Shown here piece by piece: positions 24,537 to 27,728 of a stretch of 64,000 nt of DNA. Source of the DNA: Basidiobolus meristosporus CBS 931.73 (lineage: Eukaryota; Fungi; Basidiobolomycota). A program made the position numbers and the translations under genes. Location of the stretch: contig MCFE01000192.1 of assembly GCA_002104905.1 (NCBI GenBank), positions 1 to 64,000 of the forward strand, read 5' to 3'. The notes under the pieces are model-generated. The model made no database searches, was not told the origin of the DNA, and saw only the letters and a program-made list of their open reading frames with translations. How positions within the stretch are numbered: position 1 is the stretch's first letter; each line of letters opens with the position of its first letter.

Positions 24537-24849
24537 GGTTTTATTGTCAAATGGAATGAAAGGTGGCTTGGCCCTCAATCCTCGCTTGCTGTATGTATTT
24601 ATACTTCCAGCGAGGTCCGCTTGGCATCTCGCTGGCCAATCACATCACCCACTTTCAATTAAATCGTCATGCTGCCTACGACGTTGCCAAATTTTGGTTG
24701 GTATCTCCCTGGCAATTCAAACTGCACTTGCATTCATGCCTTCACGTCATCTAATCCAAGCTTAATTCCAAACTAGGTGGTGGCTAATGACGTCTCTACA
24801 CTGTCAACGTCGGGTTACGTCACGACAGCGATTTGATATGATTGATCCG

Positions 24850-24940
24850 AGTAGTTGTCAATATTGTTGTATTAGTAGTTGTCAATATTGTTGTATTAGT
24901 AGTTGTCAGTATTGTTGTATTAGTAGTTGTCAATATTGTT
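24850..24940. repeat. 24-bp minisatellite, about 3.8 units
   Basis: AGTAGTTGTCAATATTGTTGTATT at 24850, 24874, 24898 (one A>G) and a partial unit at 24922. Confidence 0.95.
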
Positions 24941-24976
24941 TCCAAATAAAATTATTAAATAAACACAAATTCGATA

Positions 24977-26104
24977 CTATGGGAGACTTGGAGAAATGAA
25001 CAGGACTAGTAGAGAGAGTACAAGCGAGGGCAGGGCCCTGACGCTGCTTGACAGGGTGTCATACGGGGGCACAGTATCGTCGCCAGAATTGGTCTTGATC
25101 TCATTGGCCGGGGTGCGGTTACGGAATGGTTCAAGTCCCGCTTCCGGAAGGGATGGGCCACTAGGCGGGTTTGCGCAGGGGACAAAAAGCTCTTCTTTGC
25201 CAGTAATCACCGATTCATAGGCATTCAGCTTCACATTGTTCTTGAATTCAAGATCGCCCAACCCCACTAGATCCATCAGATCGCTGACCCTGTCGGCAGA
25301 ATCGGGCCAAACATCATCAGGATAGCAGCATAGTAGTTTACGTCGCACCACTAGGAATCTCTCCAAATACTCTTGCTCGTTCGATGTGGCTTTTGGCCCA
25401 GTGAGATTGATGATGGTCCTCAGGCTCAGCCCATCGTCTTCCTCCCATCCATGCTGCACTGCAGTATCATAAAAGATAGCCTTTCCTAGGCTTGAGGTGA
25501 TCCCAACCTCTGCTGCCAACTCGACCGCAGGCAAGTAGTAGATTAGATCAGCGACATCATCCTGAACACTGCGAAACTCGGGCAAGCATGATTCTCGTTT
25601 CCAGAGCTCCGCAAAGGCCATCAGTTTGCTGACATCTCCATCGGGAATACTGCAGTCAGGATGAGTGGCTAGTCTACGAAGCTCTGGACGGTACCTGGAA
25701 AAGCCAGTCTCGGCCCCCACTCTTCGCTCGTATTCCTCTATCACGGTATACAGGTCCCCAGTGCCGGTGGTGAAGCCAACAGTGCCACAGGTAAAACCTC
25801 GCTGATCGCCAATATTCTCGCAGAATCCGTAGTTGATGGTTTTGCTAGCATGCTCGAACACGTTGGTTATCAACCGAATGATTTTCTTGGCTTTAGGATC
25901 AATCATTTCCTTCTTCAGGATCTCCTGGTAATTTCTGGGTAATTTGGGCGCGCACAAGGACTGCGCTCTGACCGGAAAGTCAAACATTTGACAGTTGGTG
26001 GGACTTTTGGCGAATTCGTTTTTGCAGTAATCAAACTTGCCCCCTTGCACCCTGATACTCAGGAAAATCCAGATCATCGACAGGGCTGCTCTTGACGGTA
26101 CCAT
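24977..26104 (-). CDS. GH46 chitosanase with signal peptide and GPI-like C-terminal tail, intronless
   Basis: Aligns by eye to Streptomyces-type GH46: NVFEHAS (catalytic Glu), ENIGDQRGFTCGTVGFTTGTGD (catalytic Asp and Thr), IFYDTAVQHG, EQEYLERFLVVRR, DRVS. N-terminal hydrophobic signal; C-terminal LPSLVLSLLVLFISPSLP. Confidence 0.9.
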   Translation of the reverse strand: MVPSRAALSMIWIFLSIRVQGGKFDYCKNEFAKSPTNCQMFDFPVRAQSLCAPKLPRNYQEILKKEMIDPKAKKIIRLITNVFEHASKTINYGFCENIGDQRGFTCGTVGFTTGTGDLYTVIEEYERRVGAETGFSRYRPELRRLATHPDCSIPDGDVSKLMAFAELWKRESCLPEFRSVQDDVADLIYYLPAVELAAEVGITSSLGKAIFYDTAVQHGWEEDDGLSLRTIINLTGPKATSNEQEYLERFLVVRRKLLCCYPDDVWPDSADRVSDLMDLVGLGDLEFKNNVKLNAYESVITGKEELFVPCANPPSGPSLPEAGLEPFRNRTPANEIKTNSGDDTVPPYDTLSSSVRALPSLVLSLLVLFISPSLP

Positions 26105-26490
26105 CGTGAAGTATATCAATCTTTCTAGGCTGCTGTTTGTTGGCTCGTGTGTGTATAGATGCTTCGCTTTCTATATTCGCTTCGACAGGGCTTTGATTAT
26201 ATTTATACTACGCAGTAATGTTGGTTGACCTAGTGAATTTTCCTCTGCAGTCAGGATCATTGTTCGCTCAATATTCGGACAGTGGGAGACGTGTTAGCTG
26301 ACCCAGTGCATATATCCATTATGATTTCTGGTGCCCACTCCAGCCAGTCCAGGAAGCCGGAGAAATCCCATCTACTGCATAGCAGGGTTAGGGTATCTGG
26401 TCAGAAATGATTGGTGTTGTTTCAGCGGGAGGATAATAATTTAGCCACGATAATCCGCACCATGCCAACAATTATCACATCGGATTGAAG

Positions 26491-26530
26491 CCATACATCG
26501 AGCAGATTAACCATACATCGAGCAGATTAA
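26491..26530. repeat. Exact 20-bp tandem duplication in the chitosanase/allantoicase divergent intergenic region
   Basis: CCATACATCGAGCAGATTAA x2. Confidence 0.9.
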
Positions 26531-26690: not shown

Positions 26691-27728
26691 ATGGCCTCGT
26701 TTACTCGACTCCCTCTCGGTGACATTAAAACCACTCCTCTCGGCAATTATGTCGACCTCGCCAATTGCAAGCTAGGATCGAAGGTGGTGGCCGTATCCGA
26801 TGAGTTTTTTGCTGCTGCTTCCAACATGTTGAACCCTAAGCCCTCAGTACGTGAGATTGGTAAATTTGTGGAGACTGGCGCTTGGTTCGACGGGTGGGAA
26901 ACTCGCCGTCACAACCCCGACCATGACTGGGCCATCATTCAACTTGGTTTCCCTGGAACTATTGTTGGTTTTGACATCGATACTGCTCACTTCAATGGGA
27001 ACCATGCCCCCGTTGCTTCAGTCGAAGCTTGTTTCGTGAGTGAAGAAGAACTTAAAAGCGGTCAAGAACCAAACTACCAATGGGAGGAGCTACTTCCTCA
27101 GACCGATTTGAATCCGAACTCCAAACACTATTTCCTCCTGAATGTTCCTACTGAGACCGTATACAACTTTGTTCGTATCAATCAATATCCAGACGGTGGC
27201 ATCGCCCGTTTCCGTGTGTATGGCACTATTGTCCCCAACTTCCCGGAGAACAAAGAGGAGCTGATCGACTTGGCTTACGTGGGTAGTGGAGCTCGTGTTG
27301 TAACCTCCTCCAACGATCATTTCTCACCTGCCTCTAACATCATATTACCTACTCGTGGAGAGAACATGGGTGATGGTTGGGAGACAAAGCGCTCCCGTAC
27401 CCCTGGTCACGTTGACTATGTCATCGTGAAACTCGGAGCTCCAGGCCGCCTTGATAAGGCTATCTTCGATACCCTTCATTTCCGAGGCAATTTCCCTCAT
27501 CAAGCCTCATTGGAAGCATGTTACTCGGAGCAGGAAAACCCGCTGAATGACCCTGCAGTGGATACCGAAGCCTACTGGGTTACAATCTCCCCTAAACAAA
27601 AAACCGCTGCTGATACCGAACACGAATGGGATTTGACTCCCAAAGATAAGGTGTTTACTCACGTTCGTGCCACCATCTACCCCGATGGCGGCTTCAAGCG
27701 CCTCAGGGTTTATGGCTATCGGGCATAG
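26691..27728 (+). CDS. DAL2: Allantoicase, intronless
   Basis: Two allantoicase repeats: SDEFFA..DGWETRRH..DW and SNDHF..MGDGWETKRSR..GHVDY; YPDGGIARFRVYG and YPDGGFKRLRVYG. Confidence 0.95.
   Translation: MASFTRLPLGDIKTTPLGNYVDLANCKLGSKVVAVSDEFFAAASNMLNPKPSVREIGKFVETGAWFDGWETRRHNPDHDWAIIQLGFPGTIVGFDIDTAHFNGNHAPVASVEACFVSEEELKSGQEPNYQWEELLPQTDLNPNSKHYFLLNVPTETVYNFVRINQYPDGGIARFRVYGTIVPNFPENKEELIDLAYVGSGARVVTSSNDHFSPASNIILPTRGENMGDGWETKRSRTPGHVDYVIVKLGAPGRLDKAIFDTLHFRGNFPHQASLEACYSEQENPLNDPAVDTEAYWVTISPKQKTAADTEHEWDLTPKDKVFTHVRATIYPDGGFKRLRVYGYRA

What the first reader, a model, noticed from the sequence alone, without database searches (positions are those of the whole stretch)
24977..26104. 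Bacterial-type GH46 chitosanase fitted with a fungal signal peptide and GPI-like anchor
Seen: an intronless ORF with the GH46 catalytic region (Glu in NVFEH, Asp/Thr in IGDQRGFT), extra Cys residues (FDYCK..TNCQ..LCAP; CCYP), a signal peptide, a P/S/T linker and a hydrophobic C-terminus. Known: GH46 is mainly bacterial and chloroviral, while typical fungal chitosanases are GH75; early-diverging fungi have chitosan-rich walls. Inference: a horizontally acquired enzyme repurposed as a surface-tethered chitosanase, for own-wall remodelling or attack on fungal/insect chitosan.
Basis: partly seen in the sequence, partly recalled or inferred. Interest (0 to 1): 0.75.

Follow-up and report, generated by a model that had tools for sequence, protein, structure and literature searches.

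The report
Fungal GH46 chitosanase with GPI-like tail
This is an intact Basidiobolus gene for a secreted chitosan-cutting enzyme from an old, fungus-wide branch of family GH46, not a recent bacterial import; its one unusual feature is a predicted lipid (GPI) anchor signal at the C-terminus.

Summary
Window 24977-26104 (- strand) is an intact, intronless 375-codon ORF. It has a GH46 domain (Pfam E 1e-36; modelled fold TM 0.87 to solved GH46 enzymes) and the catalytic residues E84, D100 and T105. It also has a signal-peptide-like N-terminus, 10 cysteines, a Pro-rich disordered stalk and an uncharged hydrophobic C-terminus.

The gene is not a recent bacterial acquisition:
- It lies in a ~20-kb block collinear with Basidiobolus ranarum, where a 78%-identical, same-architecture ortholog occupies the same slot.
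- In ML trees all zygomycete GH46 sequences (Basidiobolus, Zoopagales, Mucorales, Umbelopsis, Endogonales) form one clade (99/98) apart from all 41 named bacterial sequences in that tree.
- That clade carries its own N-terminal Cys module and CC motif.
- GH46 in zygomycetes is already in the literature (2011, 2015, 2023).

The GPI-like signal is new at a modest level. It consists of S352-S-S, a 6-residue spacer and a 15-residue tail, kept in register in the ortholog. A crude rule finds it in only 3 of 49 fungal family members. It is a prediction only; no RNA run was listed.

The deposited annotation of this genome (B. meristosporus assembly) holds only a 135-aa fragment of the gene. The scan's first readers also noted GH46 paralogs with GPI-like tails elsewhere in this genome.

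The parts
24977..26104 (-). Complete CDS: 375 codons plus TAG stop, single exon
   Evidence: The ortholog P0001 (373 aa, 78% identity, 99% coverage) is also a single exon. Against that ortholog, dN is 0.068 over the GH46 domain while dS is saturated.
26042..26104 (-). Signal-peptide-like N-terminus (residues 1-21; predicted cleavage after VQG)
   Evidence: Charged n-region (R5), a 12-residue hydrophobic core, V at -3 and G at -1. The ortholog has the same layout, ending VHG before AKFDYC. This is rule-based; SignalP was not run.
25889..26041 (-). Fungus-specific N-terminal Cys module (residues 22-72; C27, C38, C51)
   Evidence: It is conserved in nearly all full-length fungal homologs and absent from the bacterial-type rows (alignment A1). 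The top 15 library clusters align from query residues 8-25 or are N-terminally shorter proteins. Later hits mostly start at about residue 70. AF2 pLDDT is about 73-95 here. There is no Pfam match.
25331..25870 (-). GH46 catalytic domain as matched by Pfam (residues 79-258). The modelled fold runs to about residue 320 (window 25145).
   Evidence: PF01374 at E 1.1e-36. PDB sequence hits to GH46 enzymes. Foldseek gives TM 0.87 and rmsd 2.1-2.5 to 6lwu and 7c6c.
25853..25855 (-). Codon of E84, predicted general acid
   Evidence: It aligns to E19 of 7c6c, which is Ala in the E19A mutant 7c6d. It is at least 90% conserved in A1 and A2.
25790..25807 (-). Codons of D100 to T105 (DQRGFT): predicted general base Asp, Arg, and water-positioning Thr
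   Evidence: Gapless alignment to D35..T40 of 7c6c. In the fungal alignment A1, D100, R102, G103 and T105 are each at least 90% conserved. In the mixed alignment A2, G103 and T105 are invariant and D100 is at least 90% conserved.
25325..25330 (-). Codons of C259-C260, the CC motif (LLCCYP) typical of the fungal clade
   Evidence: At least 90% conserved among the fungal rows. The two bacterial-type rows P0036 and P0037 have other residues here.
25052..25174 (-). Pro-rich stalk (residues 311-351) after the last Cys (C310), with one N-glycosylation sequon (N329-R-T)
   Evidence: Composition. pLDDT falls below 55 from residue 321. dN/dS against the ortholog is 0.13, so the stretch is constrained coding sequence.
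24980..25051 (-). GPI-attachment-like signal (residues 352-375): candidate omega site S352-S353-S354, spacer VRALPS, and an uncharged 15-residue hydrophobic tail
   Evidence: Rule-based scan. The ortholog has S-T-G, MRTLPT and a 14-residue tail in the same register. Both ORFs end within one codon of each other.
25469..25873 (-). The only gene model for this locus in the deposited annotation: a 135-aa fragment (residues 78-212)
   Evidence: Called genes on GCA_002104905.1 MCFE01000192.1 and its translation. The full 375-aa sequence is not in the protein collection.

Best explanation
The gene encodes a full-length member of the zygomycete clade of GH46 endo-chitosanases, in Basidiobolus meristosporus (assembly GCA_002104905.1). 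It was inherited vertically within Basidiobolus and belongs to a family that has expanded in that genus.

Proposed mechanism:
1. The signal peptide sends the protein into the ER.
2. The ten cysteines, including a fungus-specific N-terminal module and a CC motif, form disulfides that stabilise the two-lobed helical GH46 fold.
3. E84 (acid) and D100 (base, through a water held by T105) cleave beta-1,4 GlcN linkages in chitosan or partly deacetylated chitin, with inversion as in characterised GH46 enzymes.
4. The C-terminal 24 residues are read as a GPI-attachment signal and cut at about S352. The enzyme then sits on a roughly 40-residue Pro-rich stalk at the outer face of the plasma membrane, or is transferred into the wall.
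5. There it would trim the fungus's own deacetylated chitin during growth, or work on chitosan in direct contact with the hypha.

What is shown: the ORF, the family, the fold, the catalytic residues, the clade, synteny and purifying selection.

What is inferred: secretion, GPI attachment, the substrate and the biological role.
For: Family and fold.

Catalytic residues: (E84 aligns to the residue mutated in 7c6d), with conservation.

Fungal clade:
- The word search returned 37 hits, and every named one is a zygomycete.
- In the exhaustive search, the top 15 clusters with names are all fungal.
- The ML trees place 41 fungal rows plus one unnamed fungal-type row in one clade at 99/98. The window is sister to B. 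ranarum P0001 at 100/100.

Resident gene: about 20 kb is collinear with B. ranarum, in the order zinc finger, NIF, ATP synthase b, C2, GH46, cyclin, UQ_con, glutathione synthase, PX/Vps5. GC is 0.51 and GC3 0.57, inside the neighbours' range.

Selection: domain dN is 0.068 with dS saturated. The stalk has dN/dS 0.13.

GPI-like signal:
- There is no charged residue in the last 19 positions.
- The omega triplet, spacer and tail are in the same register in both species although only 9 of 23 aligned tail residues are identical.
- AF2 leaves residues 328-375 unstructured.

Literature: zygomycete GH46 enzymes are known, Cys-rich, only distantly related to bacterial ones, and thought to recycle wall chitosan (PMC3032700, PMC4663542).
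Against: - No dedicated predictor (SignalP, NetGPI, big-PI) could be run. My GPI scan is a crude rule.
- No RNA run was listed, so expression and transcript ends are untested. The public annotation holds only a fragment of the gene.
- No fungal GH46 has been characterised biochemically in the papers I could search, so chitosanase activity is by homology only.
- To my knowledge, Basidiobolus walls are usually described as chitin-glucan rather than chitosan-rich, which weakens the own-wall role.
- The stalk is short and Pro-rich, not the long Ser/Thr-rich region typical of wall-linked GPI proteins.
- Chlorovirus, oomycete, chytrid and Kickxellomycotina GH46 sequences are not in my trees.
Confidence: 0.6

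Rival explanations
1. Same enzyme, but not GPI-anchored. The hydrophobic C-terminus would act as a plain C-terminal membrane span, or be clipped or ignored, and the chitosanase would be released into the medium as a digestive enzyme. Basidiobolus lives on insect remains in the guts and dung of insectivorous amphibians and reptiles.
For: - Most family members, including five Basidiobolus-clade paralogs (P0002, P0005, P0006, P0007, P0011), have no tail.
- The family is expanded in Basidiobolus, with at least 8 copies in B. ranarum, which suits nutrition.
- The stalk is short.
- No predictor or experiment backs the anchor.
Against: - The tail has no flanking basic residues or cytosolic stub, as a stop-transfer span usually has.
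- Small residues sit at the right distance (omega, omega+2) in both orthologs.
- The tail's length and hydrophobicity are kept over a divergence at which synonymous sites are saturated.
Confidence: 0.3
2. One reading: a bacterial-type GH46 acquired by horizontal transfer in the Basidiobolus lineage and then fitted with eukaryotic targeting signals.
For: - GH46 is mostly bacterial.
- The gene is intronless.
- Basidiobolus has a literature record of bacterial gene acquisitions (PMC7466969, title and abstract).
Against: - The ortholog sits in a conserved syntenic slot in B. ranarum.
- All zygomycete GH46 sequences form one clade at 99/98, whose inner branching is broadly species-like.
- The N-terminal Cys module and CC motif are shared with Mucoromycota.
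- Composition is ordinary.
- The intronless neighbours (C2, allantoicase) show that lack of introns is not diagnostic here.
Confidence: 0.03
3. This concerns the origin of the whole clade and is not exclusive of the best explanation. One ancient transfer of GH46 from bacteria (or a giant virus) into an early fungus would be followed by vertical descent, duplication, and loss in Dikarya.
For: - GH46 is reported as absent from animals and plants and was first seen in eukaryotes in a zygomycete (PMC4663542).
- Ascomycetes use GH75 instead (PMC3032700).
- The fungal clade is a single branch in a tree whose other named rows are all bacterial. Its nearest rows in the quick tree are a Patescibacteria and a Bacteroidota sequence.
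Against: - The tree is unrooted, so nesting inside bacteria is not shown.
- The nearest bacterial neighbours have open or modest support.
- Chytrids are also reported to have GH46 (PMC6572847), which pushes any transfer very deep.
- Chloroviral and oomycete sequences are missing from my trees.
Confidence: 0.4
4. The protein acts on another substrate such as bacterial peptidoglycan. Databases name it 'lysozyme-like protein', and GH46 cluster E proteins carry peptidoglycan-binding domains.
For: - Database names.
- The best bacterial hit, from Laceyella, is fused to an M23 peptidase.
- Basidiobolus lives among gut bacteria.
Against: - E84, D100 and T105 are present.
- D117 is invariant in both alignments. 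It has the same spacing as the -2 subsite Asp that binds the GlcN amino group, a residue conserved in chitosanase clusters A-D but not in cluster E (PMC4663542).
- The closest structures are true chitosanases crystallised with GlcN oligomers.
Confidence: 0.07

Closest known systems
Zygomycete GH46 proteins (Rhizopus oryzae RO3G_09825 and a second copy; Lichtheimia ramosa LRAMOSA04613 and LRAMOSA01487), described in PMC3032700, PMC4663542 and PMC10769135
   Same: Same clade in my tree, judging by the Rhizopus and other Mucorales rows. They share the signal peptide, the N-terminal Cys module, 10-12 cysteines, the CC motif and the catalytic residues.
   Different: The Mucoromycota members sampled here end in a short Cys-containing tail or a His-rich tail. 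None has a hydrophobic C-terminus. Identity to the window protein is 35-48%.
Basidiobolus ranarum K7432_003969 (P0001, 373 aa, annotated 'hypothetical / lysozyme-like protein')
   Same: A 1:1 ortholog: 78% identity, the same syntenic slot, the same architecture including the GPI-like signal, and a single exon.
   Different: It comes from a different species. The signal peptide and tail sequences have diverged (7 of 20 and 9 of 23 residues identical), but their physical character is kept.
Bacterial GH46 chitosanases with solved structures (Bacillus subtilis CsnMY002 7c6c/7c6d, Gynuella GsCsn46A 6lwu, Streptomyces N174 1chk)
   Same: The fold (TM 0.87 for the best matches 6lwu and 7c6c; 0.77 for 1chk), the catalytic Glu/Asp/Thr, and an endo-acting cleft.
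   Different: Foldseek sequence identity is 25-34%. They lack the N-terminal Cys module, the CC motif, the stalk and the tail, and they are soluble secreted enzymes.
GPI-anchored fungal wall enzymes (GH18 chitinases such as A. nidulans ChiA, Cryptococcus chitin deacetylases Cda1-3, Gas/Gel GH72, Dfg5 GH76). Named from general knowledge; Dfg5 from PMC7902864.
   Same: The same logic would apply: signal peptide, catalytic domain, flexible stalk and GPI signal, giving a polysaccharide-modifying enzyme held at the membrane/wall interface.
   Different: The catalytic family is different. Anchoring here is predicted only.
GH75 chitosanases of filamentous ascomycetes
   Same: The presumed substrate (chitosan) and extracellular location.
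   Different: An unrelated family. GH75 is absent from zygomycetes, which use GH46 (and GH8) instead (PMC3032700, PMC9866270).

Membership tests
GH46 (CAZy) / Pfam PF01374 | Profile match above the curated threshold | tested here: met
   126.9 bits against a cut-off of 27, E 1.1e-36, residues 79-258.
GH46 (CAZy) / Pfam PF01374 | Catalytic general-acid Glu (E22 in CsnN174, E19 in CsnMY002) | tested here: met
   E84 aligns without gaps to E19 of 7c6c, which is Ala in the E19A mutant 7c6d. It is at least 90% conserved.
GH46 (CAZy) / Pfam PF01374 | General-base Asp and water-positioning Thr (D40/T45 in CsnN174, D35/T40 in CsnMY002) | tested here: met
   D100 and T105 lie in DQRGFT, in gapless register with 7c6c. 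T105 is invariant in A2 and at least 90% conserved in A1. D100 is at least 90% conserved in both.
GH46 (CAZy) / Pfam PF01374 | The -2 subsite Asp that binds the GlcN amino group, conserved in clusters A-D (PMC4663542) | tested here: met
   D117 (GTGD) is invariant in A1 and A2. Its spacing from the Thr (+12) equals the T45-to-D57 spacing of CsnN174. That numbering comes from my own knowledge, so the mapping is inferred.
GH46 (CAZy) / Pfam PF01374 | Two-lobed, mainly helical lysozyme-like fold | tested here: met
   AF2 mean pLDDT is 83. Foldseek gives TM 0.87 and rmsd 2.1-2.5 to 6lwu and 7c6c.
GH46 (CAZy) / Pfam PF01374 | Endo-chitosanase activity (EC 3.2.1.132) | not testable with these tools
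   This needs recombinant enzyme and chitosan substrates.
Zygomycete GH46 clade | Groups with the Mucoromycota and Zoopagomycota sequences, apart from bacteria | tested here: met
   The clade of 41 fungal rows plus one unnamed fungal-type row has UFBoot 99 / SH-aLRT 98. The quick tree of 128 rows gives SH-aLRT 95.
Zygomycete GH46 clade | N-terminal Cys module (C..C..F.F) and the CC motif after the RR(K/Q)L helix | tested here: met
   C27, C38 and C259/C260 align with the fungal consensus.
GPI-anchored protein | Cleavable N-terminal signal peptide | tested here: met
   Met by rule only: R5, a 12-residue hydrophobic core, and VQG at -3..-1. SignalP was not available.
GPI-anchored protein | C-terminal signal: small omega and omega+2 residues, a 5-10 residue spacer, and an uncharged hydrophobic tail running to the C-terminus | tested here: met
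   S352-S-S, VRALPS and a 15-residue tail. The same register is found in ortholog P0001. Only 3 of 49 family members pass the rule. The rule is crude and not a validated predictor.
GPI-anchored protein | Actual lipid remodelling or attachment and surface location | not testable with these tools
   This needs PI-PLC or HF-pyridine release, or a tagged-tail reporter.
Recent bacterium-to-fungus horizontal transfer | Recipient sequence nested within a donor clade, away from other fungi | tested here: not met
Recent bacterium-to-fungus horizontal transfer | Absent from the syntenic position in close relatives, or patchy among relatives | tested here: not met
   It is present in the same slot in B. 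ranarum and widespread in zygomycetes.
Recent bacterium-to-fungus horizontal transfer | Composition unlike the host genome | tested here: not met
   GC is 0.51 and GC3 0.57, against 0.44-0.52 and 0.40-0.62 in neighbouring coding stretches. The codon-usage correlation was too noisy to use.

The most novel reading that the evidence does not exclude
This orthogroup (the window gene plus B. ranarum K7432_003969) would be the first GPI-anchored member of GH46, and the first surface-tethered chitosanase of any family. It would have arisen inside the expanded Basidiobolus GH46 family by adding a stalk and an omega signal to a secreted enzyme. That would mark a split between freely secreted (digestive) and cell-surface (wall-remodelling or contact-digestion) chitosanases in a gut-dwelling fungus.
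Probability: 0.5. Interest if true: 0.35.

Novelty: new variant of a known kind. Interest (0 to 1): 0.27.

Why it matters
Zygomycete fungi lack the GH75 chitosanases of ascomycetes. At least one survey of fungal wall proteins therefore concluded that chitosan-rich lineages have no chitosanases at all (PMC5872309). The GH46 clade fills that gap, but no fungal member had been characterised in the literature I could search.

A member held at the cell surface would be a natural candidate for the enzyme that loosens deacetylated chitin during hyphal growth, spore release or germination. It would also be a simple test case for GPI targeting in an early-diverging fungus.

On the practical side, the public annotation of this genome carries only a 135-aa fragment of the gene. 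CAZyme and secretome counts for B. meristosporus therefore miss its secretion and anchoring signals.

The HGT claim, which gave the finding most of its original interest, does not hold.

Tried and rejected
1. RNA evidence. The look-up of sequencing runs listed no RNA run for window 24600-26500. Expression, transcript ends and absence of a 3' intron remain untested.
2. Chlorovirus GH46. Two scans of viral contigs, with a fungal alignment and then a mixed alignment, gave nothing and then one contig (L067) that groups with Bacteroidota. Cluster C is therefore missing from the trees.
3. Codon-usage correlation with neighbours was too noisy to use. Neighbour-versus-neighbour r ranged from -0.06 to 0.60, and two of my exon frames contained stops. 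Only GC and GC3 are used.
4. Disulfide pairing from the AF2 model could not be read, because the coordinates are not exposed to scripts.
5. One literature search with min_terms 2 returned only taxonomy papers. Phrase searches for 'fungal GH46' and similar found nothing.
6. Contamination or a chimeric assembly was considered and rejected on synteny.
7. Pseudogene was considered and rejected: the ORF is intact, dN is 0.068, and the length is conserved.
8. A hidden 3' intron removing the tail was considered unlikely. Both species keep the frame open to within one codon of the same end, and the stalk has dN/dS 0.13.
9. The organism behind P0055, the unnamed sister of all zygomycete GH46, was not pursued. 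Its neighbourhood looks eukaryotic, with a split Methyltransf_16 gene.
Full report
**Observation.**
- The ORF list shows one long open frame at 24977-26119 on the - strand. From the first ATG (26104) it encodes 375 residues and ends in TAG.
- Pfam assigns residues 79-258 to Glyco_hydro_46 (PF01374) at E 1.1e-36, 126.9 bits against a threshold of 27.
- The closest solved proteins are all GH46 chitosanases. The best is Bacillus subtilis CsnMY002 (7c6c, E 6e-35).
- The alignment to 7c6c is gapless over the active site. Query E84 pairs with E19, the residue changed to Ala in the substrate complex 7c6d. D100 and T105 pair with D35 and T40.
- An AlphaFold2 model built on 36 homologs has mean pLDDT 83. 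Residues 23-320 are confident and 328-375 are disordered.
- Foldseek ranks GH46 structures first, with TM 0.87 and rmsd 2.1-2.5 Å.

**Source and annotation.**
- The neighbouring C2 protein and allantoicase are found by exact sequence in a public assembly.
- The C2 gene sits on GCA_002104905.1, contig MCFE01000192.1.
- This is the assembly that also encodes P0005 and P0021, which NCBI names Basidiobolus meristosporus CBS 931.73.
- The deposited annotation calls only a 135-aa piece of the gene, residues 78-212 at window 25469-25873. The full protein is not in the 15-billion-protein collection.

**Resident fungal gene.**
- The best hit is B. ranarum K7432_003969 (P0001): 373 aa, 78% identity, 99% coverage. 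It is also a single exon.
- tblastx of window 14-38 kb against that B. ranarum contig gives a collinear series: zinc finger, NIF phosphatase, ATP synthase b, C2, GH46, a GTPase fragment, cyclin, UQ_con, glutathione synthase and PX/Vps5. Several of these break into exon-sized blocks.
- This excludes contamination or an assembly chimera and places the gene before the split of the two species.
- Against the ortholog, the GH46 domain has dN 0.068 while synonymous sites are saturated. The stalk has dN/dS 0.13. The signal peptide and tail have diverged in sequence (dN about 0.5) but not in length or character.
- GC (0.51) and GC3 (0.57) fall within the range of neighbouring coding stretches.

**Family distribution and phylogeny.**
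- The word-based search found 37 relatives. All named ones are zygomycetes: at least eight B. ranarum paralogs, B. meristosporus, many Mucorales, Umbelopsis, Jimgerdemannia and Syncephalis.
- The exhaustive search of 1.84 billion representatives found 1060 hits.
  - The top 15 clusters (E ≤ 1e-43) either align from query residues 8-25, so they include the N-terminal Cys module, or are N-terminally shorter proteins.
  - Those with names are fungal: Basidiobolus, Bifiguratus, Jimgerdemannia, Thamnocephalis, Piptocephalis and Zychaea.
  - After them, most hits start near residue 70. The one that could be named is bacterial, a Laceyella M23-GH46 fusion.
- A scan of one genome per bacterial species returned 65 loci at 27-41% identity.
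- A quick ML tree of 128 domains puts all 45 fungal rows in one clade with two rows I had labelled unknown (SH-aLRT 95). One of these is a second Jimgerdemannia entry and the other is P0055.
- A careful tree of 96 rows gives UFBoot 99 / SH-aLRT 98 for 41 fungal rows plus P0055.
  - P0055 is an unnamed sequence that has the fungal N-module and CC motif.
  - Mucoromycota form a 100/94 group nested among Zoopagales and Basidiobolus.
  - Umbelopsis is sister to a Mucorales group.
  - Two old Mucoromycota paralog lines each contain Jimgerdemannia.
  - Besides window/P0001 (100/100) there are three more B. ranarum / B. meristosporus pairs.
- The literature agrees:
  - Lichtheimia GH46 were reported as the first eukaryotic members, with 10-12 cysteines (PMC4663542).
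  - 'Numerous GH46 genes' occur in Kickxellomycotina (PMC9866270).
  - GH46 is also reported in chytrids (PMC6572847).
- Whether the clade began with a very old transfer cannot be decided from an unrooted tree that lacks chloroviral, oomycete and chytrid sequences.

**The C-terminus.**
- This is the only feature not already described for the family.
- After the last cysteine (C310) come 41 residues with 8 Pro and one NRT sequon. Next come S352-S353-S354, then VRALPS, then a 15-residue uncharged hydrophobic tail.
- The ortholog has S-T-G, MRTLPT and a 14-residue tail in exactly the same register, although only 9 of the 23 aligned residues are identical. Both ORFs stop within one codon of each other.
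- This layout is that of a GPI-attachment signal.
- A crude rule required small omega and omega+2 residues, no charge from omega+9 onward, and mean hydropathy above 1. It passes only the window protein, P0001 and P0021 among 49 fungal family members.
- Three other Basidiobolus paralogs (P0003, P0004, P0012) have shorter or charged hydrophobic ends. No Mucoromycota member has one.
- The tail is therefore an addition within one Basidiobolus sub-lineage of an expanded family.
- First-reader notes elsewhere in this genome also mention GH46 paralogs with GPI-like tails. I checked only P0021 among B. meristosporus paralogs.
- No validated predictor and no RNA data were available, so anchoring remains an inference. 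I put it at roughly 0.55-0.6.

**Mechanism proposed.** The protein would enter the ER through its signal peptide and form disulfides. GPI transamidation would occur near S352, displaying the enzyme on a short stalk at the membrane/wall interface. There it would hydrolyse GlcN-GlcN linkages with inversion, using E84 and D100. The role could be trimming the fungus's own deacetylated chitin or contact digestion of chitosan. The main rival is a plain secreted digestive enzyme whose tail is not used for anchoring.

**Comparison and novelty.**
- It is a member of GH46 on every defining feature testable here.
- It belongs to the already-known zygomycete branch of that family.
- It works like the GPI-anchored chitinases, chitin deacetylases and glucan-modifying enzymes of other fungi.
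- I found no published GH46 or other chitosanase with a GPI anchor.
- I therefore rate it a new variant of a known kind. Interest is low to moderate, because the HGT story fails and the anchor is only predicted.

Noticed in passing
window 25469-25873 (-): The deposited annotation of this assembly (GCA_002104905.1, MCFE01000192.1) models the gene only as a 135-aa internal fragment (residues 78-212). Other B. meristosporus GH46 models are also N-terminally truncated or marked partial (P0021, P0040, P0198).
   Followed up: yes
window 26691-27728 (+): There is an intronless allantoicase gene (345 aa, PF03561, E 6e-99) between GH46 and the GTPase gene. It has no counterpart at the syntenic place on the B. 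ranarum contig. B. ranarum does have a 188-aa allantoicase fragment on a separate 4.8-kb contig, so the difference may be assembly fragmentation rather than a real rearrangement.
   Followed up: partly
window 24850-24940: A 24-bp unit is repeated 3.8 times (97% matches), starting 37 nt downstream of the GH46 stop codon in the AT-rich 3' flank. On the + strand it produces a spurious Cys-rich repeat ORF (24787-24999).
   Followed up: no
window 26491-26530: A perfect 20-bp direct repeat (2 copies) lies in the 540-nt divergent intergenic region between GH46 and allantoicase. It may be a shared promoter element.
   Followed up: no
P0047 (ENA metagenome, 1159 aa, contig 60.7 kb): This protein has three to four tandem GH46 domains separated by poly-Pro linkers, behind a roughly 290-residue N-terminal region. 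It groups with Actinomycetota rows on a long branch.
   Followed up: no
P0055; L068 8001-9119: This is an unnamed 372-aa GH46 with the fungal N-module and CC motif and a His/Lys-rich tail. It is sister to all zygomycete sequences (99/98). Its neighbourhood looks eukaryotic, with a split Methyltransf_16 gene. Similar His-rich tails occur in Gongronella (P0008) and Hesseltinella (P0013).
   Followed up: partly
P0048 / L001 (Laceyella sacchari, 683-693 aa): The best-scoring bacterial relative (43% identity over the domain) is a fusion of an M23 peptidase region with a C-terminal GH46 domain.
   Followed up: no
P0014, P0029 (Rhizopus), P0042 (Bifiguratus): These are GH46 domains joined to an aldo-keto reductase (PF00248) or to an areA GATA-like region within single gene models of 524-674 aa. 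They are probably merged neighbouring genes in those annotations.
   Followed up: no
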